DNA of 64,000 bases from Hemiscyllium ocellatum (taxonomy: Eukaryota): NCBI RefSeq assembly GCF_020745735.1, contig NW_026869307.1, forward strand, positions 62,001-126,000. The letters run 5' to 3'. The position numbers and the translations under genes were made by a program. Each line of letters starts with the position of its first letter. Position 1 is the first letter of the stretch. The notes beneath the pieces were generated by a model. That model made no database searches. It saw only the letters and a program-made list of their open reading frames with translations, and was not told the origin of the DNA. This document shows, piece after piece, positions 5,497 through 61,460 of this stretch.

Positions 5497-8400
5497 GAAC
5501 ATAGAACATTGAACATAGAACAATACAGCACAGAACAGGCCCTTTGGCCCACGATGTTGTGCCGAACATTTGTCCTAGCTTAAGCAACTATCCATGTACC
5601 TATCCAATTGCCTCTTGAAGGTCACCAATAATTTGACTCCGCCACTCCCACAGGCAGCACATTCCATGCCCCCACCACACTTTGGGTAAAGAACCTACCC
5701 CTGACTACCCTGTATTCCGCATTCTTATTTGTTCTTCCAAAATGGACAACCTCACACTTGAACGAGTTGAACTCCATCTGCCACTCCTCAATCCAGCTCT
5801 GCATCATGTCTAAGTACCTTTGCAGCCGACAACAGCCTTCCTCACTATCCACAACTCCACCAATCTTCGTATCGTCTGCAAATTTACTGAATCACCCTTC
5901 GAATCCTTCTTTCAAGTCATTAATAAAAATTACTAACAGCAGAGGATCCAAATCTGATCCCTGCCGAACTCCACTTGTAACTGGGCTCCTGGCTGAATAT
6001 TTACCATCTACCACTACTCTCTGACTTCGACTGGTTAGCCAGTTCTCTATCCAACTGACCAAATTTCCCACTATCCCATGCATCCTGACTTTCCGCATAA
6101 GCCTACCATGGGGAACCTTATCAAATGCCTTACTAAAATCCATGTACACTACATCCACTGCTCTACCCTCATCCACATGCTTGGTCAACTCCTCAAAGAA
6201 TTCAATAAGACTTGTAAGGCAAGACCTACCCTTCACAAATCTGTGCTGGCTGTCCCTAATCAAGCAGTATCTTTCCAGATGCTCATAAATCCTATCCCTC
6301 AGTACCCTTTCTATTACTTTGCCTACCACCAAAGTAAGACTAACTGGCCTGTAATTCCTAGGGTTATCCCTATTCTCTTTTTTGAACAGGGGCACAACAT
6401 TCGCCACTCTCCAGTCCCCTGGCACAACACTGTTGACAGTGAAGACGAAAAGATCATTGCCAACGGCTCTGCAATTTCCTCTCTTGCTTCCCACATAATC
6501 CTAGGATATATCCCGTCAAACCTGGGGGACTTGTCTATCCTCAAGTTTTTCAAAATGCCCAACACATCTTCCTTCCTGACAAGTATCTCCTCGAGCTTAC
6601 GAGTCCGTTTCATACTCTCCTCTTCGACAATACGATCCCTCTCATTTGTAAATACTGAAGAAAAGTACTCATTTAAGACCTCTCCTACCTCTTCCGACTC
6701 AATACACAGTCTCCCACTCCTGTCCTTGATCGGACCTACCCTCGTTCTCGTCATTCTCATGTTTCTCACATAGGCATAAAAGGCCTTGGGGTTATCCTTG
6801 ATCGTACCCTCCAAAGATTTTTCATGCCCTCTCTTAGCTCTCCTAATCCCTTTCTTCAGCTCTCTCCTGGCTATCCTGTATCCCTTCAATATTCTGTCTG
6901 AACCTTGTTTCCTCAATCTTTTGTAAGCCTCCTTCTTCCTCTTTACTAGACATTCAATCTCCCTCGTCAACCAAGGTTCCCTCACATGACCATCTCTTTC
7001 TTGCCTGACAGGTACATACATTTCAAGGACACGTCATATCTGTTCCTTGAAAAAGTTCCACATTTCAACGACATCCTTCCCTGACAGCCTATGCTCCCAA
7101 ATTATGCTCCTCAGATCCAGTCTTGCAGCATCTTATTTACCATTCCCCAAATTGTAAAACCTACCCTGTTGCACGCATCTATCTCTCTCCATAACCAAGA
7201 TGAAAGTCACAGAATTGTGGTCACCATAACCAAAATGTTCACCCACTAACAAGCCCATCACTTGTCCTGGTTCGTTACCAAGTACCAAATCCAATATGGC
7301 CTCCCCTCTGGTCGGACAATCTACATACTGAATGAGAAAAGCTTCCTGGACATACTGCACAAAAACAGCCCCGTCCAATCTACTTGATCTAAAGAGCTTC
7401 CAATCAATATTTGGGAAGTTGTAATCGCCCATGACGACTACCCTGTGGCTTCTGTACCTTTCCAAAATCTATTTCCTGATGTGTTTCTCCACATCTCTGC
7501 TGCTATTGAGGGGCCTATAGTAAACACCCAACAAGGTGACTGCTCCTTTCCTATTTCTGACTTCAGCCCATACCAACTCCAAAGGCAGATTACCCTCGAA
7601 CTGCCTTTCTGCAGCCATTATACCGTTTCTAATTAGCAACGCCACACCCTCTCCTTTTTTTTTACCACCCTCCCTAATCTTACTGAAACACCTATAACCA
7701 GGAACCTCCAACAACCATTCCTGTCCCTCTTCTATTCACGTTTTCCTGATGGCCACAACATCGTAGTCCCAAGTACTGATTCATGCCGTAAGTTCACCCA
7801 CCTTATTTCTGATACTCCTTGCGTTGAAGTATACACACTTGAACCCATCTCTGTGTCCGCAAAACATCCTGAAAAACAGCTAACCTGCTTGCTGGACTAC
7901 AAGTCCAGATCCCATCCCCATGCTAAATTTGTTTAACACCCCCCCCCCCCCCGCGAAGAGTGCTAGCAAACCTACCTCCCAGGATATTGATGCCCTTCTG
8001 GTTCAGGTGCAAGCCGTCCTGCTTGTACAGGTCCCACCTTCCCCAGAATGCAGTCCAATTGTCCAAATACCTGAAACCCCCCCTCCTACACCATCCTTGC
8101 AGCCACGTGTTCAACTGCACTCTCTCTCTATTCCTTGCCTCACTGTCACGTGGCACCTGCAACAACCCAGAGATGACGACTCTGTCCGTCCTAGCTTTTA
8201 GCTTCCAACCTAACTCCCTGAGCTCCTGAATGACCTCCCCACCTCTCTTCGTTGGTGCCAATGTGCACCACAACTTCTGGCAGCGCACCCTCTCCCTTAA
8301 GGATTCTGAAGACACGGTCCGAGACATCTCAGATCCTGGCATCAGGGATGCAACAAACCAACCAAGAGTCTCGCCCATGTGCACAGAACCGCCTATCTGT

Positions 8401-8981: not shown

Positions 8982-9281
8982 CTGGAAGTAAATAAAAGAG
9001 TTTGGATATCACTTCAAAACTTCTAACTTTAGAATAGGAAGGTCACGTATAAATCGAGTGGACAGTTCGAATGAGGGGATGAAATAAATCCACTCTATAT
9101 TGTTATGTCGTATGGCTAATCACATAACTATTTGTGATATCCGCTTCATCCTTCAAAGGTGTAGGAAAGTGCTCACATTTTCTCCGCAGATAATCACGAC
9201 ACACCTGCACTTTGCGACTTCAAACGAGGATGATTGGGCCTTGGAAATTAAAAATATTCAGTGAAATAACGAACGTCTTAC

Positions 9282-9380
9282 CAGCTGATGCCTTTAACTC
9301 GAGTCTTGTCAAAATTATTACCAATAGTAAAATTGCCAGCGTGCCAACTGCCCACCTAGAGGTCAGCAGATAATCTTTCC
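9282..9380 (-). CDS. Module C exon: transmembrane with Arg (GKDYLLTSRWAVGTLAILLLVIILTRLELKASA)
   Basis: 99 nt phase 1/1, acceptor ctgtag, donor GCTG|gtaaga. Exon end and the first 40 nt of the downstream intron are clearly homologous to the gene A TM exon. Confidence 0.82.
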
Positions 9381-27808: not shown

Positions 27809-27949
27809 TTAAATTCTTGCTTTCTTTGCCACCTTTATGCCTGCATATAATGTAGAATTGTCTTGGAGTTTGGGTGTTGATGCTTTCTTGGAACCAGGTA
27901 TTTGCAGGGTGGCATACATCAGATTGTTATCTTCGCTTCCTTTTTTGGT
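27809..27949 (-). CDS. Gene A terminal coding exon with ITIM LMYATL and ITSM-like TLYAGI
   Basis: Acceptor ttttactttcacag. Translation TKKGSEDNNLMYATLQIPGSKKASTPKLQDNSTLYAGIKVAKKARI*. Homologous exon at 60847-60951. Confidence 0.88.
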   Translation of the reverse strand, partial: TKKGSEDNNLMYATLQIPGSKKASTPKLQDNSTLYAGIKVAKKARI

Positions 27950-30900
27950 CTGTGAAAGTAAAATTTAATATCACGCATTATTCCATCATTGACTCTTTGC
28001 TAAACACAGTCATTTTTTAAAATAAAAAGACTTCAGTGGAATTTCCTTTCATCATTTGCCAACTTCAGAGTGTAACAGAGTTTATAATTATTATTAACTG
28101 ATTTCTCTCCACTCTGCAGCTCTGCAGTAAAAGTTCTTGTTATTCTGATTTAAACTTCTCATAAAATAAGCTAGAATATCAGCATTGCCCATTAAAGAAA
28201 GCACGTTATTACTTCAATTAAAATAGCAAATGAATGAATTGTCGGTGTATTAAATGTGTTTGGAATGCTGATATTGCAAAACATCACTTTCGACACCCAA
28301 TTTCTGAGCCGTGACAGCCAATGTGATGTGCTTACCGATTGGATAGGCCTCCAGTTGCAATTCACTACCAGCTTTACCCCCCATTGTTGCTGATTTACCG
28401 AACCCTGGGACCCAGGCGAATATGGTGAGCCTTGGCCGAGATGGTCGGGCCCAGTACAGTATGGGTTAAACCTCTGACCTTTCGATTCCTACAGTTTAGA
28501 TTAGGGCCAAACATCATTGAACGTCTTTTAAAAATGTTAAAGCTTCACTTGATCATAGACGGTAATCTTCTTTGTTTGTTTGGGATTCTTATTTGTCTTG
28601 GTGCTGAATTCGACAGGGTAGGCATAAGGAAGTTTGTTCTGAGTTCCGTACTTTGTCTGTAAAATCGCTATTTGCCACTCTTACCAGTTCAGTTGCTATC
28701 ATTATTACTGCTAGTTCATAAAAGGAAACAATGATAATTTTCATTGCATTCTCACACAAAACTCACAGTAAGACCTAGCTGTCCATTTGATATCTCCCCT
28801 GATTTCTATTTCCAACAAAATCGGCAAAAGAGACATCGACATCAGTTTACTTTTGTCTTTTTAGTCATAGCATAGCATGCAAACAAGGAATAAGAGCACG
28901 GCACTAGGCCCTTCAATCCTGCTCCATCATTCAACAATGTCATGGCCGACTCTGTCAACACTCCATTCAGATTCCCCTCGATAATCTTTCATCTGCTCTA
29001 TCATCGACAATTTATGTACCCCGCCGTAACACATTTAACGTTTCTGCATTTAGTGCCATTTGAAGAAGGCATCTTCAAAGACTTACAACCCTACGACAGA
29101 AACGAAAAATCCTCACCCCTGTCTTAAATAGACAATCATTTACTTTTAAACTTGGCCTTCTACTTTTAGATTCTCCCACAAAAGGAAAGATCCTTTCAGC
29201 ATCCACCATGCCAAATTTGTCAGGATCTTATATATTTCAATTAAGTCACCCCTAACTCTTCTAAACTCCAGAGGTATAGGCCAACTCAATGGTTTATAGC
29301 TTTTGAAAAGGAAGAGAGAAATCAAAATTAACATAGGCCCCGAAGAGGAGGTGGAGAAAAAACATGGGGCAACCAGGAAATGGTAGAATACACTAGCAGC
29401 TTTCTAAGTTATTAAGTATCCAAGGGCAAAAGGAGGAGTGGAATTAAAGAAAATAACTGTCACTGGAGAGGATGCGTCAGGGAAACTAATGGGGCATAAG
29501 ACTAATATGTCCCTTGGACCTGATGCAGTACATTACACAATATCAAGGGAAGAAGATACAGTAGTGGATGCACCAGTAGTAATCTCCCAGAAATCCTTAG
29601 ATTCTGAAAGAAAAACTCCCAGAGGAGTAAAACTTTTCCAAACCAACATCTTTATTTAAAAGGAAATAAGACAAGAAATAGTAATAAATAGGCTAGTTAG
29701 CGAACGCTTGAGTCAATTATAAAGGATGCAGATCATTTCAAAATACATAATATCATCAGAGTCAGCTTGCCTTCATGAAGGGGTAAGCATGTCTGACAAA
29801 CTGACTTTTTTTTTATTGAGGTCAGAAGGAGGGCAGATGAAGCTGAAGCAGTAGATGCAATACTTTTGAATTTTCAGGAGACCTTTACTAAAGTACCACA
29901 AACTAGGTTGCTTTATCAGATTAAAAACCCATGATGTTGCGGGCAGTACATTAACATAGATTTAGGATTGGCGAAGTAATAGAAAACTGAGAGTTGGGAT
30001 AGAGTGGTAGGGCATTTTCAGAATGGAAACCTGGAACTTCTGGTGTGACACAGGGATTAGTGCTGGGGTCAAAAGGTTTCCAATTATATATATTTATATA
30101 TATTACATTTAGATGTAGCAAGTGAATGTACAGTGGCCGAGTTTATGGTTAACATTAAAGTAGGCTGGGTGATGAGAATTACACAAAAATCTTTAGAGGG
30201 ATTTAGCCCGATTACGTGAATGGGCAAAGATTTGGCAGATGGGGTATAATGTGGGAAAATGTGAGATTTATACACTTTAGCAGAATGAATGGAGGGAACG
30301 AATATTCTTTAAGTGCAGAAAGCCTGCAGAATGCTATGGAGCAGAGGGATTTTGGAGTCCCAATTCGTGAATCACAAAAAGCTAGCACTCACTTACAACA
30401 GGCAATAGAGAAGGCAAATGGAATGCTGACCTTTATTTCAGTGAGAATGGAATATAAAAGGCAGGGATATTTGCCAACACTATACGAGGCACGAGCTAGA
30501 TCATAGCTGAAATACTGTGAACAGTTTTCTGACCCTTATCTCAGAAAAAGGTGTATTGGCATTGCAGGCAGTCCAGAGAAAGTTCACTGGGCTGGTATCA
30601 GATCAGAAGGAAGTCTCTTATGAGGACATGTTAAGATGGCTTGGCCTGTACTCATTGGAATTTAGAAGAATGAGGGGTGACTTGACTGAAACACACAATA
30701 TGCTTAGGATAATTAACGAGGTAGATGTGGAGAGTTTGTTTCCCATGTGAGAGTCTAGGACCAGAGGGCACATTCTCAGAATAAGTGATTGCACCTTTAA
30801 AATAGAAGAAGGAATTTCTTCTATCAGAGGTTAGGGAATCTATGAAAGTATTTATGACACAAGTTTGGATTATTAATGTTGGGTTATTAAAAACATTCAA

Positions 30901-33900
30901 ACTATTCATTTACTGACTAAAACTATATTTTAGGCTTGAATATAGATTTTTAGTCTGTAAAGAAATAAAATGTGAAAGGAAAGGGGCAGGGTTATGGAAT
31001 AGAGGTTTGTAAGATCAATTTTCAATTCCTTGGATGGTGGAGCAGACTGGATGGTCTAAATGGCTTAGCTCTCTTTTGTTATTTCATTCATAATTAGTGG
31101 ACATCATTGGCTAGGCCAGCATTCATTCTCCACCCCTAACTGAACCAGAGGGAAGTTGAGAGTCAACCACATTGCTGTGACTCTGGATTGACAAGTAAGG
31201 CAAATCAGGTCAAGATGGCAGATTTCCTTCCCTGAAGACCGTGTCTTATGGTCATGAGATCACACAAGGGAATCTGCTCATTTCCGGTATTAGTCTAGTA
31301 AACCTTGCCTGAACTACTTTCAATGTCCTTCCATCAAAAGGGTGACCAGTATTGTACGCAGTGATAAAGAATTGCTCCTATCAATCCCTTGCATTCATGA
31401 AATAGGGAGCTGTTCTTCTGATAACAATTCACGACAGTTTGCATGATCAATGTTTACTGAAATTAGCTTTGCATTCCAGATTTTTCGATTGAATTAATTT
31501 CCATTAGCTGCCCTAGTGAGATTTAAACCGATGTCCCCATACTATTAACATTGGCAACTGAATATCTGCCGCTTGTTCTGTTTTATCAAGTCAAAGGTAC
31601 AGCACCCCCTTCCCTTACTGTACAGTGTCTTTTTTTAAACGACTCCATTATCGCAATGACAAAGTGAAAGTGAGGACTGTTGATGCAGGAGGTCAGAGTC
31701 GAGAAGTGTAGCGGTGAAAAAGCACAGCAGGTCAACCAGCATTGGAGGCTCAGGAGTGAAGATATTTGCCGAGACATCGACTCTCCTGCTTCAGTGATGC
31801 TGCGTGACTTGCTGTGCTTTTCCAGCACCAAACTTTTCGACTCCATTATCACAATGTTGATGTTGTATGGGAGTGGCGTGGATATTTTGTTCTTGACAAT
31901 TCTGGCAGCATACCTGGGAATAGTCAGTATTTTCTTCCGCGCGTCTGTGTTTGGAGAATCCTTTGTTGGCTTTCAATTTTACTGCAGCAGAGGCGGCGTT
32001 TTCTTCAGATGGTGCTTTTCTAAGCTAGAAAATAAGATATGAAATATCGATAGAAGCGTGTTTGATTTTACAGCCAGCCATCGCCAACTGGAACTGAACA
32101 ATAGAATATTAACGTGCACACAGTAGTTAATCAAACAACCTAGAAATTGCATTCTGTCAACTCTCAATGATTTGCATCGAATATCTCACCAATGTGGTTG
32201 GGAGTAATGTTCTAAATATGAAACCCAGAGCATTCAAGGCATTTACCTACAATTTAACATACAGCTGACGAAAAATAGACATTCATTAATTCCTTGTTTA
32301 TCTCTAGGACTCTTCAACCTTGTTGTGGCCTCGGCAGTTTCCTTTTTCCATAATTAACCCAATCTATTAGAAGATCAGACAGCGAAGCCTTTGGCTGTTC
32401 TCCTTATACTTCTGGAATCTTGCATCCTCTGACTGGCAACCAACAATTAGATTTCTGGCAAAAATTCTCCCCAAGCACGTCTACAGCCATTATTTCCTCT
32501 CCCTCAGAAACTAGGAAACAGCCTGCCCCCAGCACTGCTAACAAAGGAATATAATACAGAAAGACCTGAGATTTTATGTCCCACACTACTTGAGGAAGAT
32601 GCCGTGGTTTCGAGAGGACATAACAGAGATTTACTAGAAGGGTCCACCGTTCAGGGATGTCAATGATGTTTAGAAGCCTGGACATGATGTTTTACATAGA
32701 TCAGTTACGTTTAAGGGGAGATTTAACTTAAATGTCTAACATGTTGAGAAATTGTGATGGAATAAATTAGGATAAACTATTTTCATTGGCTGGATGTTTG
32801 AGATTTAGGTGACAAGATTCGTTTTCATTGGTAAATAATCTGGGGAGTATGTTTGTTCTGCAACCCAGTGAGCGCCTGCAAACTGACAGAGTGACAGGAA
32901 GAATTCGATAGGAACTTTCAAAAAGAGAACTGGTTTGACACGAAAAATGTAATAAACAGGAAAATAGCACGAGACCGGAACAAATTGATTAATTGCCTCA
33001 TAGATGCAGTAGAGGTTCTAACTCTTCATCCCGGGCACTGTAATTCTCTGTTCTGTGAAATCTAAGTAATTTCGACCGAACGCAAAATCATTGCTATCCT
33101 TTCCACGCACCCACCTCTTAGTTGTTTGGAATATAATGAATATTATCTCCTTACCGGTTGGCTATTTTGATTTGCTTCCACCGAATTTCTCCCTCTGCCT
33201 AATAGAAAGCAAAGTAATATACCATGAGTGACAGAATCACTTATTCAATGTTGTCTTCGCTGCAAGAAACGTTTAATTTCTATATATAGTTCAGAAATCT
33301 AGTTGGACAATGTTCAGCAGCATCAAGCTCATTATGCTGTGTTTTACCTGCTCACTGCTCTCATCGCGCTTCCCCCAATGACGCAGAGTCAGTCACTATG
33401 TGACAGTGCAAGTGCAAGTTGGCATCTTATTTAATCTTACAAAATTAGAATGGAAATAAAATCTGCGGATGTGCATATCTGTTTGTGAGTTCGAAAACGC
33501 CCACTTAACCTTAATGCCAAATGCCAAAATTCACTTCGAAAAATGTTTCCTTCTCAGGAAAGAGGACCTCCACTGAACTATAATAGAGGACACTCAAAAT
33601 TTCGATTGCAGCAGCATGGAGGTGAATAAACCGAGTGTATAGTTCGAATAAGAAGGTGAAATATTTGCTTTTCAAATACGGTTAGCTCCTCATATCCACA
33701 ATTTAAAGTCAGACCTTTGACTTCTCACCTGCTCTCTATGCTTCTTACACTGGGGTTATGGAAATAAAAAGTATACAGTGAAATAAGAAAGATTCTTACC
33801 AGCTGATGCTTTCAATTTGAGTATCAAGAAAATGCTTATGATTAGTATCATCGTCAATGCCCCTCCTGCACCTCCAATAATCATCAGACGATTGAAATCT

Positions 33901-36900
33901 TCACCTACAGAATCAACACGTGATGGAAGTGAACATGTGTGGAACACAGGAGTGACATATGCAGAGCATAATGCACAGGATGATAAATTGCAAAGGTGTT
34001 TCCCAGGATAACCCAACTGTTAACCAAATTGGACCGTTTTAATTTTGTTGGGAAAACCTGTACAAGGTCCTTAATTTGCATCTGACCCAATGAGTTGCAG
34101 CTCAGCTATGTATTTTATGGAGAAAACAAATATAATGACTTAACGGTGTGAGAAACTTCATCTGCATAGGAACACTGCTTGCTCTGAGTAAAGGAAGTTG
34201 TACTTGCTCATTCATAGAATCCTAGAAGAATCATAGAATCCCTATAGTGTGGAAACAGGTTATTTGGCCCAACAAGCCCACACCGATCCCCTGAAAAGTA
34301 TTGCAGCCAGACCCTATTGCTCTCCATTTCCCCGAATGATGCACGAAATCTACACATTTCTTAACACTATGGGCAATTTAGCTTGGCCAATTCATCTAAC
34401 TTGCACATTTTTGAACTGGGGGAAGAAACCGAAGCACCCGGAGGAAACCTGCACAGACTCGGGGAGAATGTGCAAACTCCATAGTCGCCGGAGGCTGTAA
34501 GTGAAGCCGGTTTTTTTGGTGAATCAACATTGTGAACCACCGAGCCACCATGCTGCAATTTCGGATCTTCCCCACACCACACACCCCATTCCCTATTAGA
34601 TATATTTTCAATCTTACCTCGATTAAAGGTGTAGCTGACGCTGGTGGGCACCTTAAGACAAGCATGAGATACCAGACAGGTATAAACTACACCATTCTGC
34701 ACAGGCTGTGCATCTTCCAATGAACTAGTAACCTCATAAAGTCCATCCACAGTCTTGTTTTTCACAGTCTCTATTCCAATATGAATTTTCAAACCATCTC
34801 TTAACCAAGAGATTCCTAATTCCTCTGGGTAAAATGCAGTCGTTTTGCATTCGAATTTCAAATAGTTCTCTGAAATCCCTTTTATGGGAACGATTTTCTG
34901 GAGTTTCGGAGGAACTATAACAGAAAATCAAACCTTTTAAAATAATAATTTTCATTCTCTTTTTTTCACCCTTCGCACTCGACCCGTTTCGGCACCCCAT
35001 GTAATGCTGTTCCATTACTAACGTGACAACAGTTTTCCTTGTTATTCTGTTTGAAACTTGGTATTTTGCACTTATTTTTAAAAATGCTCGGCAAAATGTT
35101 TGGATCATTTGCAAACGATGCACAACGAGCATAAACATGGGTAGAAAAACTTTAATGAAATGCAGCTATCATAATCCTCGGGGTTTAGCTTTATGTAAGT
35201 GAATTCGGTTTGTTGAACCTTTTTTGGAAGACATTCTACCTGGAGGTAACACACGAATTAGGAGCTGAAGTAGGACAGTCAATGGGTATCTCCATCCTGG
35301 AGGCTCCCTGCCTCCATTCCTGATGAAGGGCTTTTGCCCTCTCTAATCTAAACTTTGGTTTACACCATCTGCAGTCCTCACTTTTGCCCAGCCAATGGCT
35401 TGTCAATTCAGGCATTTGAGCCTGATCCAACAGTTAATGTGACCTTCTCTGAGTTCTTTCTGTTCCTGATTGGCATTCCCGGTTTGGTCTGAAACCCTTT
35501 TTTGAAGTTTCAATTCTACATTATTCAAGTGACGTTGTGTCCTCTCCATCTACAAGCGGTGCTTAGCTGCGAGCTGATCTCCTGTTATAACTTTTATTGC
35601 ATCGAAAGAATAAGCTACAATCACGAGCGCAAACGTCTTTTGGCATGTTTGCTGCTGCCCTTACTTCATTTTGCCTGCTATGCCTACATCAGAGAGTATC
35701 CATTTGGCAAACCGCAGGGGGTCAAACAGAGGCAATGGGCAACTTCACTGCCTTACAGCTTTAGGATTGTGGATAGAATCCAGCGTTGAGGGCAACATCA
35801 ACACTTGCTGTCTCACTGAATCATGTGATTCATTTGTTAAAACAAGCATTGGCATTTCAAGCATGTTAAAGTGGGAAAATGCGCACCTGAAACACTAAGC
35901 AATTCCATTCTTGAACTTACTCTGCCATTCACTTAGGTTATGGTTGAACTGTACCTCAACTCCATTTGTCCGGTTTTATTCAATTTCCTTTATCCCCAGG
36001 ATTAAGTTTACTCGATGTTGATCTCCAAGTTTGAAGGATTTGCGACAGAATAGTTTGATCGGCAATTTGGGGTCAAAACATTATCTTGTGTCTGTTGAAT
36101 ATTAATGGCCGTGGGTATGTTATCATTCACCTTAATTTGACGTGAATGCATATTGTCGATGCTGATTAGATGGTCTTTATGATCTTGTATCAAAGCTGTT
36201 GGAGCTGTTAAAATTATTCTTCTGAAAGATTACGACCTGAAATGTTAATTGTGTTATTGATCAACAAGGAAGTACAAAAGTATCAGAGCGGACAGGAAAA
36301 TGCAGTTGAGACCATAATCAGATCAGCCATAATGTTGATGAGTGGCTAAGTAAACACAAGGGATGAATGGTCTACTCTTGCTTCTAATTCTTATGGTCGT
36401 ATTACCAAGTAGATGTTCAGACATATTTCAAGTCATTTCTGTTCATATTCCAACTTTTCAAAATCTGTAGTACATTGTTTTGTTTTCTTTTTGGTTCTGT
36501 TGTCACAGTTTAGTACCATTATTTTGGTTAGAAGTAAACTGTGCGTTTTGCCTCATGATATAAAAGACAGAAAGTGCTAGATAAACTGAGTAGGTCTGGC
36601 ATCATAAGAACATAATAAATAGTTGCAGTGGTAGGCCATTTGACCCTCTAAGCCTTCTCTGCCATTCAATAAGCTTATCGCTTTCTTGGACTCAGCTCCA
36701 CTTCCCCGCCCTTTCACCTTTACTTTCTTTAATGTTCAAAAATCTAAGTGTCTTTGCCTTAAAAACATTCCTCGAGCGTAGCTCCAGTGCTTCACTGGAA
36801 AGGGAATTCCTCAGATTCACAACCATTTGAGTGAAGAAGTTGGACCTCAACTCAGTCCTAAATCTGTTCCCCCTAATTTTGAGGCTATGTGTGAAGTGAA

Positions 36901-37978
36901 AGGAGAGTTAACGTTTCCTGGTCCAGTGACCTTCCTTCAGAAACGTTCTAAAGGATAGTTGAATGCTAAACGTTAGCGCGCACAGATGCTGCCAGAACTG
37001 CTAAGTTTTTCCAGCAATTTCTAGTTTTGTTTCAGATTTCCAGAATGCACATTTTTTTGTTTTATCTTATTGCATGAATTAATTTCATCGTAAAATTTGA
37101 ACAGTTATCCCATTTCACTATCTTGACGCAAGATCAACTACTTCTGCCCCAAAAAGGCACTCATTGAACTAATAACACTGTGCAATGTCATGATCACAAT
37201 GAGCAGTGGAATTGACATTGAGAAATGGCGTAAGACGTACGAAATCTAATCAACAGCCTTTGTACAGCGAGGTCATTGGGGAAGAGATCCCCTACAATGT
37301 GAAGCAAATACTCTGTAACCGAGTTTTCTCTAATTATTAAAGCTCAGATCACATGAATTGCATAAAACAGCTGAATAGTTGTTTGTCCTGGGTGCAGTGC
37401 CACTTACCGCACACTGTCAGCAATGAGCCGCTTTCCGCTCCATGGGTGGCTTGCTGATGCTTTACTTTACAATGATACATTCCAGAATCTGTAAATGTGA
37501 CGTTGAGAATGTGAAGCGAGCCTCTTCCTTTCTGGACGTGAAAACGCTTTCTGTTGTCTGGTTCCAGAAACGATTCCTCGTTGTGTCTCCACCAAAATAT
37601 TTCAGGAACATGTTCAAATATTGGAAATGTGCAGAACATGGAAACATTGTCACCTCTCGCCGCCTCTAAGAATTTGGGAAACTGATGTACTTTGCTCGAA
37701 GTTACTTTAGTGACTACTGAAAAAAAAAGTAAAACCATGATACTAGCTGTAGACAGCTGACATGAAATAACCTCGGGAGGAGTAAAACATGCAAACAATT
37801 GAGAACAATCGCACGCATCAAATTGGAGAAGCAAGACATCAAACTTTGCAATTCACGGAAGTTGTAAATATGAAATAAAATCTAGGTTACTCTAAAAGGG
37901 CAATTCGTAACATATAGGAGTACCTGGCCAAGCCATACGCAGAAGAGCCATGAACAGAACCGCTGCTCTCACCGACAT
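27809..37978 (-). CDS. Gene A: multi-exon type I membrane Ig-superfamily receptor (leader-V-C1-TM-long tail with ITIM and ITSM-like motif), SIRP/NKp30-like architecture, about 404-417 aa
   Basis: Exons 37978-37924, 37716-37408, 34914-34618, 33904-33800, 33198-33155, 32024-31914, (28805-28767), 28488-28336, 27949-27809. All have AG/GT boundaries and compatible phases (1,1,1,1,0,0,0,0), giving one uninterrupted frame of 1254 nt with the optional 39-nt exon. Exact family name is not assignable without a search. Confidence 0.85.
28336..28488 (-). CDS. Gene A exon: cytoplasmic 4 (ESKGQRFNPYCTG...WRPIQS)
   Basis: Donor ATCG|gtaagc, acceptor aaactgtag, 153 nt. The only open frame ends in phase 0. 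Homologous to 61326-61460. Confidence 0.7.
28767..28805 (-). CDS. Gene A candidate exon: cytoplasmic 3 (KSGEISNGQLGLT), optional
   Basis: 39 nt phase 0/0, good donor ACT|gtgagt, weaker acceptor ttttgttggaaatag. The gene stays in frame without it. Confidence 0.45.
28870..31060. mobile_element. CR1 fragments in a gene A intron (minus 3' piece 28870-29280; plus RT/3' piece 29290-31060)
   Basis: LEFRRVRGDLIEIYK and LYSLEFRRMRGDLTETH motifs. Confidence 0.75.
31080..31520 (-). mobile_element. DeuSINE/SacSINE-like or L2-tail-sharing SINE remnant
   Basis: Reverse complement contains GAAGGAAATCTGCCATC...CAGCAATGTGGTTGACTCTCAAC; the family assignment is from memory. Confidence 0.45.
31914..32024 (-). 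CDS. Gene A exon: cytoplasmic 2 (LRKAPSEE...EENTDYSQ)
   Basis: Acceptor atcttattttctag, donor CAG|gtatgc, 111 nt phase 0/0, open frame. Confidence 0.75.
33155..33198 (-). CDS. Gene A exon: cytoplasmic 1 (GRGRNSVEANQNSQP)
   Basis: Acceptor ctttgctttctattag, donor CCG|gtaagg. 44 nt converts phase 1 to phase 0 as the downstream exons require. Confidence 0.8.
33800..33904 (-). CDS. Gene A exon: transmembrane (GEDFNRLMIIGGAGGALTMILIISIFLILKLKASA)
   Basis: 105 nt phase 1/1. Acceptor ctgtag is conserved with the paralog at 9381; donor GCTG|gtaaga. Hydrophobic core has no charged residue. Confidence 0.9.
34211..34557 (-). mobile_element. HE1-type SINE in the C1-TM intron of gene A
   Basis: Same body as 3634-3918, ATTCTATG-type tail. 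Confidence 0.85.
34618..34914 (-). CDS. Gene A exon: C1-set Ig domain
   Basis: Acceptor ttttctgttatag, donor CGAG|gtaaga, 297 nt phase 1/1. C1 motifs CKTTAFYPEELGISWLRDG, DGLYEVTSSL, YTCLVSH. Confidence 0.95.
37408..37716 (-). CDS. Gene A exon: V-set Ig domain
   Basis: Acceptor tttttttttcag, donor TGCG|gtaagt, 309 nt phase 1/1. B-strand Cys (MFCTF), C-strand Trp (IFWWR), DSGMYHC, J-like end GAESGSLLTV. Confidence 0.95.
37924..37978 (-). CDS. Gene A exon: signal peptide (MSVRAAVLFMALLRMAWP)
   Basis: ATG plus 55 nt hydrophobic stretch, donor CCAG|gtac, phase 1 matches the V exon. Confidence 0.8.
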
Positions 37979-53270: not shown

Positions 53271-54793
53271 GAACTTTGTCCACCCCAAATCTTGAGTAGC
53301 AAAGTTATAAAGGATCTGCTAATATTGGGAATGATGGAAAATGGAATTTGCTTTGCACGTGCAGTGAAAAACCTGGATTGGTTCGATCTTGTGCAATGCA
53401 GCGACACATTAAAGGTCACTGATTGTAACTTTGACAAACCACAAGAAGTGATAGGTGACGCCTTCCACACTCTTATTCCTCTTATTGCTGTTGCCCACCC
53501 CTCACCCTTGCAAATCACCCACCCTGTTAGCCAAACAAGCTTACCAGCTTTAAAGCAGCAAATTGATGGGTGAGGGAATTTCAAAATCAGTTGTCCCATC
53601 ACTATGAAAATGTCCTATAATATTGTACCTGAACGACTCTTTACAGTCCAACACTTTATTAGTGCCGATATACTGCCAGATAAAAGTCAATATAGACATT
53701 GGTCAGACTTACATCTTGTTTATAACGGAAATCCAACGGTCCTCTGGTCAAACAAATTCTTGCACACAATGAAAGATTTTTAGCTAGCTCTTTTCAAATT
53801 CCTCTCTGCTTTATGAGGGATTGAACGTGGGCACGTACGATTTTCCTGAAGTCTTTTAAACGTCTTCAGTTCCCAAAACGTCTATTAGGCTCGAAATAAA
53901 TTGATTTACAATGCTGGAACCATGCACGTGTCTTTATATTATGCTCTGATTGGCACGTGTTACAACATCACAATGAAAGCTGCTCAACTCTGGTTGACAG
54001 TCCTGTTGATAGAATTGGATCTCTGGGATTGGACTCTCACTGGGCCAATCTTTGAGCATCAAGAACTAAATTGTTCCTGTCTTTCAGTAGGTTCATTCTA
54101 TCCTGTTCTATCCAACTCACTCAACCTACTGCAGTATAGTTTGATTAAATAAAAGGCCTTGCAGCCCAAATGCTATTTTCTACTTTGTTTTTGAATACAA
54201 TGATACTATATCTTGTTTACATTGGTGTAGCAGCTCCATCTCTGGAACATTCAAGTAATGTTTTCGCCTTCAATGTAGAAGCTAATTACATCTCTGTGCT
54301 TGTTAGGTTTGGCTGTTCTTTTATTGAAAACGGCAGGCATTAAACTCAAATAACTAAAGCAAAATTGGTTTCGGGACAAGTTGTGGAGTTTTGGATGCAG
54401 TGGCCTTCCTCCTGCCTACCGATCCCATGACATAGAAAACTATGTATGTTTATATATAGAAGACCATGTTTACTGAATGATGACTTTCATTTCAAATAGT
54501 ATCAGGTCTCGCAATGGTATGTAAAGATATTTGTGAAACTCTGCAAACTAACTCCAAAGTCAATGCCAATTTCGAAATGCACAAACAAGTGTATGTTTAC
54601 AAACCAGAACACTTGGTTTGAACTTAGTTTTCAACTTGTGACAAGTTGAAAATGGTTTTGGAAACTTTGCCCTCGGTGTGGTCAGCTCCTGACATTACGT
54701 GGGTTTTTTTTAATGGATTGGCCAGCAATTCTTCCATGTAGCATTTCCCAATAAACACAGATATTCCAGATATTTAGTTCTTAGCCTAACTGT

Positions 54794-60713: not shown

Positions 60714-60846
60714 TTGTAATGCATGTTAATAGCAATTGGTTCATGTTTTATAATGCATAACGAAATACAATGCACCAGCATCCATTACTATCTTCCATCT
60801 TCCCAATATATCTAGAGTCTCAGCTGCGCCGATTTCTTCATCACGT

Positions 60847-60951
60847 TTATTTCTGCACATTGTTCTGTTGTTTGGGTTTTGATGCTTTCTTGGAATCAGT
60901 TATTTGCAGAGCAACATTAACCAGCTTTTTATCTTCTCTTCCTTCATTGGT
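60847..60951 (-). pseudogene. Gene B terminal exon paralog with Tyr motifs lost (TNEGREDKKLVNVALQITDSKKASKPKQQNNVQK*)
   Basis: Aligns codon by codon with 27949-27809 and has the same ttcacag acceptor. Y to N in the ITIM; about 10-nt deletion plus TAT to TGT at the second motif. Confidence 0.8.
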
Positions 60952-61325
60952 CTGTGAAAGTAAAATTAAATATCGCCCGGTAGTCCATCGGCGACTCATC
61001 CACAGAGACAGTCGAGGTTTTAGTAAAAAGGCTTCAGTGGAATTTCGTCTCATCAATTTCCAACTTCAGGTTGTAACTGGGTTTTGTATTACTTTCTATC
61101 TGCCATATCTCTTCATGATATAGCCCAACCATAAAAATTCTTGTTATTCTGGTTTCAACGTCTTGCAAAATGAGTTAGGATTTAAGGGAACCGGTTAGTA
61201 CTTCAACTAAAGTTGCAAAGACATTAAACGCTGGTGTGCTAAAAGTATTTGCAATGCTGACATTGCAATACATTCCTTTCAAGTTCCAGTTGCGGAGCTG
61301 TGACGGCCAATAAAATCTATTCATC

Positions 61326-61460
61326 CAATGGAGAGGCCTCAAGTCATACTTTGTAACTGCCTTTACTACACCGCTTCTGACTTTCCAGACCATGGGACGC
61401 AGGGTGAATATGGCGAACTTTGGCTGAAATGTTCGGATCCAGTACAGCGAGGATGTTAAA
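61326..61460 (-). pseudogene. Gene B remnant of cytoplasmic exon 4
   Basis: CTGSEHFSQSSPYSP matches CTGPDHLGQGSPYSP of gene A. Has a +1 frameshift, donor GT to GA at 61324, and its 5' end is replaced by a CR1 3' tail. Confidence 0.75.

What the first reader, a model, noticed from the sequence alone, without database searches (positions are those of the whole stretch)
27809..37978. Intact non-rearranging V-C1 receptor with ITIM plus ITSM-like tail
Seen: eight to nine exons assemble into one frame, of which the ORF track shows only pieces. The ectodomain is one V plus one C1 domain with three NxS/T sites (NVS, NVT, NKT). The terminal exon has LMYATL (I/V/L/SxYxxL/V) and TLYAGI (TxYxxV/I) about 23 residues apart. 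Established: membrane-distal ITIM+ITSM pairs recruit SHP-1/SHP-2 (PD-1, SIRP-alpha, Siglecs), and C1-set domains are largely restricted to antigen receptors, MHC, tapasin, SIRP and B7-H6. Inference: an inhibitory leukocyte receptor, possibly of a poorly characterised shark-specific family.
Basis: partly seen in the sequence, partly recalled or inferred. Interest (0 to 1): 0.75.

Follow-up and report, generated by a model that had tools for sequence, protein, structure and literature searches.

The report
Shark SIRP-like inhibitory V-C1 receptor gene
This is an intact shark gene for a small antibody-shaped cell-surface receptor whose tail is built to switch immune cells off; it is one ordinary member of a large, still unnamed receptor family of sharks, rays and chimaeras that most resembles the mammalian SIRP receptors.

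Summary
On the minus strand, 37978-27809, seven exons (not eight or nine) with canonical AG/GT sites close one 353-codon frame. They encode a leader, a V-type domain with a germline-joined J-like end, a C1-set domain, an uncharged membrane span and a three-exon tail. The tail carries LMYATL (ITIM, Y319) and TLYAGI (ITSM, Y342), 23 residues apart. NVS, NVT and NKT are present.

A Chiloscyllium plagiosum RefSeq model is 93% identical and uses the same tail junctions. A Callorhinchus relative has the same seven-exon layout.

The gene belongs to a multigene family that my searches found only in cartilaginous fishes. NCBI names its members inconsistently (SIRP-alpha-like, B7-H6-like, TCR-beta-like and others). 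The family mixes inhibitory members with charged-membrane "activating" members. Its consensus tail has two ITIM-(23)-Tyr units, like the SIRP-alpha tail. This gene has lost the first tyrosine and keeps the distal unit.

Membership in SIRP proper is not shown: there is one C1 domain rather than two, the ectodomain is equally close to B7-H6, TAPBPR and CADM, and synteny was not tested. Read mapping failed, so the junctions rest on homologous gene models.

The scan reported this family before on other pieces of this genome (s1-228438, s1-200204, s1-228430). Verdict: real gene, new member of a known kind, moderate to low interest.

The parts
37924..37978 (-). Exon 1: start codon (37978) and signal peptide; the donor leaves 1 base of the next codon (phase 1).
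   Evidence: The leader resembles family leaders (MS..MALL..W).
37408..37716 (-). Exon 2: V-type Ig domain with the J-like G strand in the same exon, so it does not rearrange. Cys47-Cys101 lie only 54 residues apart. The J-like motif has diverged: GAESGSLLTV against the family's GNGTGSxLTV. There is an extra Cys121 at the domain boundary.
   Evidence: Pfam V-set 7.6e-12. Family alignment A2. The AF2 model of the 93% identical relative shows strands A, A', B, C, D, E, F, G but no C''.
34618..34914 (-). Exon 3: C1-set Ig domain (Cys144-Cys201, FYPE...W...YTC.V.H), with an NKT site and an extra Cys207.
   Evidence: Pfam C1-set 1.1e-8. PDB hits to Ig constant domains, UrIg2 and B7-H6. Family alignment A3.
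33800..33904 (-). Exon 4: short stalk, uncharged transmembrane helix (about residues 226-250) and a KLK stop-transfer.
   Evidence: hydropathy. It aligns to the TM of inhibitory family members.
33155..33198 (-). Exon 5 (cy1, 44 nt): juxtamembrane tail (GRGRNSVEANQNSQP).
   Evidence: Splice-site enumeration. The peptide is nearly identical (one substitution) and sits at the same junctions in P0168. A homologous exon is present in Callorhinchus.
31914..32024 (-). Exon 6 (cy2, 111 nt): holds the family's first Tyr unit. Here the first Tyr is replaced by Ser (AASAAVKL); Y305 remains (TDYSQT).
   Evidence: tblastn with P0042 and P0057. P0168. The Callorhinchus exon is also 111 nt.
27809..27949 (-). 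Exon 7 (cy3): ITIM LMYATL (Y319), ITSM TLYAGI (Y342) and stop TAA at 27811-27809.
   Evidence: The motif is conserved across the family (LTYAAL nearly invariant).

Best explanation
This is a functional, germline-joined (non-rearranging) type I membrane receptor gene. It belongs to a multigene family of V-C1 receptors found in cartilaginous fishes that resembles the SIRPs. The protein has 353 residues.

Predicted layout:
- a signal peptide
- a short V-type domain that carries the ligand-binding face
- one C1-set domain
- an uncharged membrane helix
- a tail of about 100 residues

Inferred mechanism, by analogy with SIRP-alpha:
1. The ectodomain binds an unknown ligand.
2. Src-family kinases phosphorylate Y319 (ITIM) and Y342 (ITSM).
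3. The two phosphotyrosines, 23 residues apart, engage the tandem SH2 domains of SHP-2 or SHP-1, as in the SIRP-alpha ITYADL-(24)-TEYASI unit.
4. The recruited phosphatase damps nearby activating signals.

The family pairs such inhibitory members with members that have a charged membrane span. This gene is therefore the inhibitory half of a paired-receptor system.

Shown: gene structure, domain types, motifs, family membership and conservation. Inferred: expression, phosphorylation, phosphatase recruitment, cell type and ligand.
For: Gene structure:
- A closed seven-exon frame with canonical splice sites.
- 93% protein identity to C. plagiosum model P0168, with the same tail junctions.
- The same seven-exon plan in Callorhinchus.

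Domains: V-set and C1-set by Pfam. The two-domain AF2 model of the close relative has pLDDT 90.

Family:
- More than 45 chondrichthyan proteins.
- The tree puts the window gene with P0168 (100/100) inside a clade shared by sharks and rays. Inhibitory and charged-TM forms are interleaved.

Tail:
- The family consensus has Tyr units at 23-residue spacing.
- SIRP-alpha has ITYADL, TEYASI and LTYADL (PMC5413580).
- The SIRP-alpha ITYADL-(24)-TEYASI peptide is used as an SHP-2-activating module (PMC5589908).

Likeness to SIRP:
- Language-model features of a full-length member are nearest to SIRP-alpha clusters, at 0.97 and 0.96.
- A SIRP fragment cluster ranks second for the C1 exon.
- Mouse SIRP-alpha has the highest identity (24%) among Swiss-Prot structural matches.

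Possible expression: exon 31-mers occur in several runs of uncertain type, at 0.63-0.81 of sampled words.
Against: - There is no direct transcript evidence.
- The first tyrosine unit of the family tail is lost in this gene.
- The G-x-G of the J-like motif is broken (E-x-G).
- The neighbouring copies in the window are relics: the gene B tail has no tyrosines, and there is an orphan TM exon. Decay in this cluster is therefore real.
- The ligand and the expressing cells are unknown.
Confidence: 0.75

Rival explanations
1. It is the true one-to-one orthologue of SIRP-alpha (SHPS-1), working as a CD47 receptor.
For: - The NCBI name of the close relative P0168 and of many other members.
- The nearest atlas clusters are SIRP-alpha.
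- A tail plan with two Tyr units, as in SIRP-alpha (PMC5413580, PMC5589908).
- The best Swiss-Prot identity is to mouse SIRP-alpha.
Against: - It has one C1 domain, where SIRPs have two (PMC12975943).
- The family has many tandem copies per genome, falling into two deep clades, so no one-to-one relation exists.
- B7-H6, TAPBPR, CADM, BTN and CD276 match the ectodomain at the same E-values.
- An earlier scan note (s1-200204, not checked here) places a paralogue outside the SIRP locus.
- Sequence searches reached no bony-vertebrate protein.
Confidence: 0.1
2. It is a B7-H6-like (NCR3LG1-like) ligand displayed to NKp30-type receptors. On this reading it is not a signalling receptor.
For: - It has the same V-C1 ectodomain plan.
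- The B7-H6 C1 domain is among the best non-immunoglobulin PDB matches, at 6e-10.
- Human B7-H6 shows 23% identity by Foldseek.
- NCBI calls many paralogues 'NCR3 ligand 1-like'.
Against: - The conserved ITIM/ITSM units at SH2-tandem spacing, and sister genes with charged membrane spans, are hallmarks of paired receptors.
- The full-length feature search prefers SIRP clusters and lists no B7-H6 cluster among the best.
Confidence: 0.07
3. It is an intact-looking but silent or decaying copy in a birth-and-death cluster.
For: - The first tail tyrosine is lost and the J-like G-x-G is broken.
- The neighbouring gene B tail has lost both tyrosines and stops early.
- An orphan TM exon lies at about 9242-9304.
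- There is no read evidence.
Against: - There is no stop or frameshift in 1062 nt, and all twelve splice sites are canonical.
- A relative in another genus is 93% identical and shares the same tail features, so these are old and retained.
- Exon words are present in several sequencing runs.
Confidence: 0.08

Closest known systems
SIRP-alpha / SIRP family (SHPS-1, CD172a)
   Same: - A V domain with a germline-joined J-like strand, followed by C1-set domain(s).
- A tail built of ITIM-(about 24)-TxYxxI/V units that recruit SHP-1/2.
- Paired activating relatives with a charged membrane span.
- The nearest named clusters and the best Swiss-Prot identity.
   Different: - One C1 domain, not two.
- A shorter V domain (54 residues between the cysteines, no C'' strand in the model).
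- Only about 21-24% identity.
- Many tandem copies.
- This gene lacks the first tail tyrosine.
- CD47 binding and locus are untested.
B7-H6 (NCR3LG1)
   Same: A V-C1 ectodomain, a single membrane span, and a comparable structural and sequence match.
   Different: The tail has a SIRP-type ITIM/ITSM unit, and the family contains charged-TM partners. B7-H6 is a ligand, not a paired receptor (from general knowledge, not tested here).
PD-1 and other ITIM+ITSM receptors (Siglecs, PECAM-1)
   Same: A membrane-distal ITIM followed by an ITSM about 20-25 residues later, and the inferred SHP-2/SHP-1 recruitment.
   Different: The ectodomains are unrelated in plan: PD-1 has a V domain only, and Siglecs have V plus C2 domains. 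No homology is claimed, only the same signalling logic.
Ig light chain / TCR chains and the shark non-rearranging UrIg/UrIg2
   Same: V plus C1 domain order. Fab light chains are the top structural matches. UrIg2 is among the best C1 sequence matches. The V and J-like parts lie in one exon, as in UrIg (PMC12227049).
   Different: It has a membrane anchor with an inhibitory tail, no further C domains, and a divergent J motif. It does not rearrange.

Membership tests
Chondrichthyan SIRP-like V-C1 receptor family (unnamed) | The V and C1 domains cluster with family members to the exclusion of other proteins. | tested here: met
   V-C1 identity is 93% to P0168 and 37-62% to other members. The tree places the gene inside a 27-row clade with 100/99 support.
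Chondrichthyan SIRP-like V-C1 receptor family (unnamed) | Seven-exon plan: leader, V, C1, TM, then three tail exons; the first four donors are phase 1 and cy2 is 111 nt. | tested here: met
   Window model; Callorhinchus P0175 mapped on L001.
Chondrichthyan SIRP-like V-C1 receptor family (unnamed) | A tail with two ITIM-(23)-Tyr units: xxYAxL, xVYxQT, LTYAAL, xxYAxV. | tested here: inconclusive
   The distal unit is intact (Y319, Y342). The proximal unit has lost its first Tyr (Ser) but keeps Y305.
SIRP family | An ectodomain of one V-set and two C1-set domains (PMC12975943). | tested here: not met
   There is only one C1 exon between the V and TM exons, and no other Ig exon of this family in the window.
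SIRP family | An inhibitory member with ITIM tyrosines that recruit SHP-1/2, and an activating member with a charged TM. | tested here: met
   Motifs and spacing match at sequence level (PMC5413580, PMC5589908). Charged-TM relatives are P0023, P0172 and P0105. Phosphatase binding itself is not testable here.
SIRP family | Closer in sequence or structure to SIRPs than to other VJ-C1 proteins. | tested here: inconclusive
   Foldseek against Swiss-Prot puts SIRP-alpha/beta, B7-H6, TAPBPR, CADM, BTN and CD276 all within E 5e-13 to 8e-12. Atlas features favour SIRP. Profile searches against PDB were swamped by multi-domain Ig proteins.
SIRP family | Binds CD47; lies at the conserved SIRP locus. | not tested
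Look-ups with 10-kb flanks showed only further family members.
B7-H6 / B7 family | A V plus C1-like ectodomain on a ligand-type molecule without a paired activating form. | tested here: inconclusive
   The ectodomain plan is met, but the family has charged-TM partners and ITIM/ITSM tails. No authentic shark B7-H6 was available for a tree.
ITIM-bearing inhibitory immunoreceptors | An (I/V/L/S)xYxx(I/V/L) motif in the tail of a membrane protein with an uncharged TM. | tested here: met
   LMYATL at Y319; the TM has no charged residue.
ITIM-bearing inhibitory immunoreceptors | An ITSM, TxYxx(V/I), downstream of the ITIM at tandem-SH2 spacing. | tested here: met
   TLYAGI at Y342, 23 residues after Y319.
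ITIM-bearing inhibitory immunoreceptors | Phosphorylation-dependent recruitment of SHP-1/SHP-2. | not testable with these tools
   Needs biochemistry.
Rearranging antigen receptors (Ig/TCR) | Separate V and J segments flanked by recombination signals. | tested here: not met
   The V domain runs through its J-like G strand to a splice donor within one exon, 37716-37408.

The most novel reading that the evidence does not exclude
The family would be the cartilaginous-fish descendant of the gene that also gave rise to the SIRPs. If so, the two-unit SHP-binding tail and the inhibitory/activating pairing on an antigen-receptor-like VJ-C1 ectodomain were already in place in the first jawed vertebrates. 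Sharks then expanded the family into a fast-evolving, KIR/LILR-like recognition system. The cluster in this window would show that turnover in progress: an intact inhibitory gene, a copy stripped of its tyrosines, and an orphan activating-type TM exon.
Probability: 0.3. Interest if true: 0.55.

Novelty: new member of a known kind. Interest (0 to 1): 0.32.

Why it matters
Non-rearranging V-C1 genes are of interest as relatives of the precursor of antibodies and T-cell receptors. Paired inhibitory/activating receptor families are how vertebrates tune innate cells. A documented family of this kind across cartilaginous fishes, with a SIRP-like tail, would push the SIRP-type checkpoint design back to the base of jawed vertebrates. 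It would also give shark immunology a candidate myeloid or NK checkpoint family.

This particular gene adds one well-resolved, intact inhibitory member with exact exon coordinates. It does not open a new class. Related gene models already exist in RefSeq, and the scan has met the family several times in this genome.

Tried and rejected
No junction was checked with reads.
   - They were only present inside local scripts that handled the window as a whole.
2. PDB sequence searches with the single exons and with family profiles. Multi-domain Ig proteins swamp the ranking, so these searches cannot tell SIRP from B7-H6.
3. Foldseek and VIA against PDB. Only Fab light chains and TCR chains came up. 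This confirms the V-C1 plan and nothing more.
4. Word-indexed searches with the family profile and with a Callorhinchus tail. Only chondrichthyan proteins were found. Given the tool's word and length limits, this does not show absence from bony vertebrates.
5. Neighbour look-ups. No DNA was held for C. plagiosum. In Callorhinchus the flank held only another family member, so synteny was not resolved.
6. Literature. I found no paper in the held library that describes this family. The UrIg/UrIg2 papers concern different genes. The B7-H6/NKp30 paper and the first UrIg paper were not held. The PRARP paper (Fu et al. 2019), known to me only from a reference list, did not come up in the searches and was not looked up by id.
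7. I rejected P0168 as proof of a V-C1-C1 form. It carries two near-identical C1 copies, has no TM and spans 24.5 kb, so it is most likely a model fused across tandem copies.
Full report
**What is there**

The finding sits on the minus strand. Reading the sequence and enumerating splice sites gave seven exons:

| Exon | Coordinates | Content |
|---|---|---|
| 1 | 37978-37924 | leader |
| 2 | 37716-37408 | V domain |
| 3 | 34914-34618 | C1 domain |
| 4 | 33904-33800 | stalk and membrane span |
| 5 (cy1) | 33198-33155 | tail, 44 nt |
| 6 (cy2) | 32024-31914 | tail, 111 nt |
| 7 (cy3) | 27949-27809 | tail and stop |

Joined, they give 1062 nt with no internal stop: 353 codons ending in TAA. All acceptors are AG behind a pyrimidine tract and all donors are GT. 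The first four exons end in phase 1, as is usual for Ig-superfamily genes.

**Domains and motifs**

- Pfam scores exon 2 as V-set (7.6e-12) and exon 3 as C1-set (1.1e-8).
- The C1 exon's best solved relatives are Ig heavy constant domains, shark UrIg2 and B7-H6.
- The ectodomain has NVS, NVT and NKT.
- The membrane span is uncharged.
- The tail has three tyrosines: Y305 (TDYSQT), Y319 (LMYATL, an ITIM) and Y342 (TLYAGI, an ITSM). The last two are 23 residues apart.
- The V domain is short. Its cysteines are 54 residues apart, and the AF2 model of the 93%-identical relative shows no C'' strand.
- The G strand lies in the same exon and is J-like, so the gene cannot rearrange.

**Relatives**

An exhaustive HMMER search with the V exon returned giant multi-Ig proteins plus a set of single-hit proteins of 130-410 residues with 40-62% identity. 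These are V-C1-TM proteins. Searching with one of them, and then with a family profile, found only cartilaginous-fish proteins:

- rays: Mobula, Hypanus, Hemitrygon, Pristis
- sharks: Chiloscyllium, Scyliorhinus, Heterodontus, Heptranchias
- chimaera: Callorhinchus

NCBI's automatic names for them disagree. They include SIRP-alpha-like (SHPS-1-like), B7-H6-like, TCR-beta-like, Ig-lambda-like, PD-L1-like, MHC class II-like and tapasin-related-like.

One of them, P0168 from Chiloscyllium plagiosum, is 93% identical to the window protein over V-C1. It has an almost identical tail, read across the same cy1/cy2/cy3 junctions. That model has two C1 copies, no membrane exon and spans 24.5 kb. It is probably fused across tandem copies, and I do not take it as evidence for a second C1 here.

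The window itself holds only one V and one C1 exon of this family.

Mapping the Callorhinchus member P0175 on its own DNA shows the same seven-exon plan, with a cy2 exon of exactly 111 nt. The architecture therefore predates the split between chimaeras and elasmobranchs.

**Family structure**

A maximum-likelihood tree of 42 V-C1 regions shows two deep clades. The window gene pairs with P0168 (100/100) and lies inside a clade shared by sharks and rays. Its next neighbour is a Scyliorhinus member with a charged membrane span.

Members with ITIM tails and members with charged spans (..IIVDHV.. with an Arg upstream) are interleaved. This is the pattern of paired inhibitory/activating receptor families that evolve by gene birth and death.

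**The tail and the mechanism**

The family consensus tail has four tyrosines in two units:

- unit 1: xxYAxLN-(23)-xVYxQT
- unit 2: LTYAAL-(23)-xxYAxV

SIRP-alpha has ITYADL, TEYASI and LTYADL (PMC5413580). Its ITYADL-(24)-TEYASI stretch is used as a bisphosphoryl module that binds and activates SHP-2 (PMC5589908). SIRP-alpha ITIMs recruit SHP-1/SHP-2 after Src-family phosphorylation (PMC12975943).

By analogy, the window protein should recruit SHP-type phosphatases through Y319 and Y342. Its proximal unit is crippled: Ser replaces the first Tyr. P0168 shares this change, so it is old and not a recent lesion.

The structure, the motifs and their conservation are shown here. Phosphorylation, phosphatase binding, ligand and cell type are inferred.

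**Is it a SIRP?**

For:
- The atlas feature search puts SIRP-alpha clusters first for a full-length member, at 0.97 and 0.96.
- A SIRP fragment cluster ranks second for the C1 exon.
- Among reviewed proteins, mouse SIRP-alpha has the highest identity to the modelled ectodomain, at 24%.
- The tail plan matches.

Against membership:
- There is one C1 domain, where SIRPs have two.
- TCR-beta, Ig kappa, CADM2, B7-H6, SIRP-beta, TAPBPR, butyrophilins and CD276 all match at practically the same E-value.
- The family is large and has no one-to-one relation to any bony-vertebrate gene.
- No bony-vertebrate protein was reached by sequence. This is weak evidence, because the tool is word-limited.
- Synteny was not resolved.

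I therefore call the gene SIRP-like in design and do not file it as a SIRP.

**Expression**

Sampled 31-mers of the V exon and of the last exon occur in several 3-4 Gb runs of one organism at 0.63-0.81. They also occur at lower shares in small runs flagged as probable RNA. The type of the large runs is unknown.

No junction is confirmed by reads. I sent those letters to no search tool afterwards; they were only inside local whole-window scripts.

**Surroundings**

- A 70%-identical copy of the last exon and its flank lies at 60783-61447. Its 3' flank is displaced to 54049-54792. Its reading frame has Asn in place of the ITIM Tyr (LVNVAL) and stops before the second motif.
- The 3' end of the membrane exon has an 83% match at 9242-9304. 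This is the orphan membrane exon noted by another reader.
- The rest of the window shows reverse-transcriptase debris and no other recognisable gene.

**Prior knowledge and novelty**

In the held library I found no paper describing this family. The shark UrIg/UrIg2 genes are different molecules.

Gene models of relatives are in RefSeq under automatic names. Earlier reports of this scan describe the same family on three other pieces of this genome. My independent work agrees with them.

The gene is real and well resolved, but it is one more member of a family that has already been sighted. I class it as a new member of a known kind, of moderate to low interest.

Noticed in passing
window 60783-61447 and 54049-54792 (minus strand): This is an old (about 70% identical) copy of the last exon and its flank from a second gene, whose upstream exons lie beyond the window end. 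The ITIM Tyr is Asn (LVNVAL), and a stop comes before the second motif. The copy's 3' flank lies 6 kb away, which suggests an insertion.
   Followed up: partly
window 9242-9304: An 83% nucleotide match to the 3' end of the membrane exon (33759-33822), with no V or C1 exon nearby. This is the orphan membrane exon reported separately.
   Followed up: partly
residues 121 and 207 of the model (window about 37411-37409 and about 34660-34650): Two extra cysteines: one at the V/C1 boundary (LTVC) and one in the C1 G-strand region (SHACL). P0168 shares both, and other family members lack them. They may form an extra intrachain or interchain disulfide.
   Followed up: no
P0168 (Chiloscyllium plagiosum RefSeq model): The model carries two near-identical C1 domains, lacks the membrane exon, has an odd N-terminus and spans 24.5 kb. 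It is probably fused across tandem copies.
   Followed up: partly
window 5892-6494 (minus strand): An ORF with a reverse-transcriptase domain (RVT_1, 5.4e-21), that is, retroelement debris. The ORF at 7923-8384 has a GDSL-lipase-like match below the Pfam cut-off.
   Followed up: no
   Followed up: no
L001 26142-27843 (Callorhinchus): A second V-C1 family gene lies 8 kb downstream of P0175, so the family is tandemly clustered in the chimaera too.
   Followed up: no
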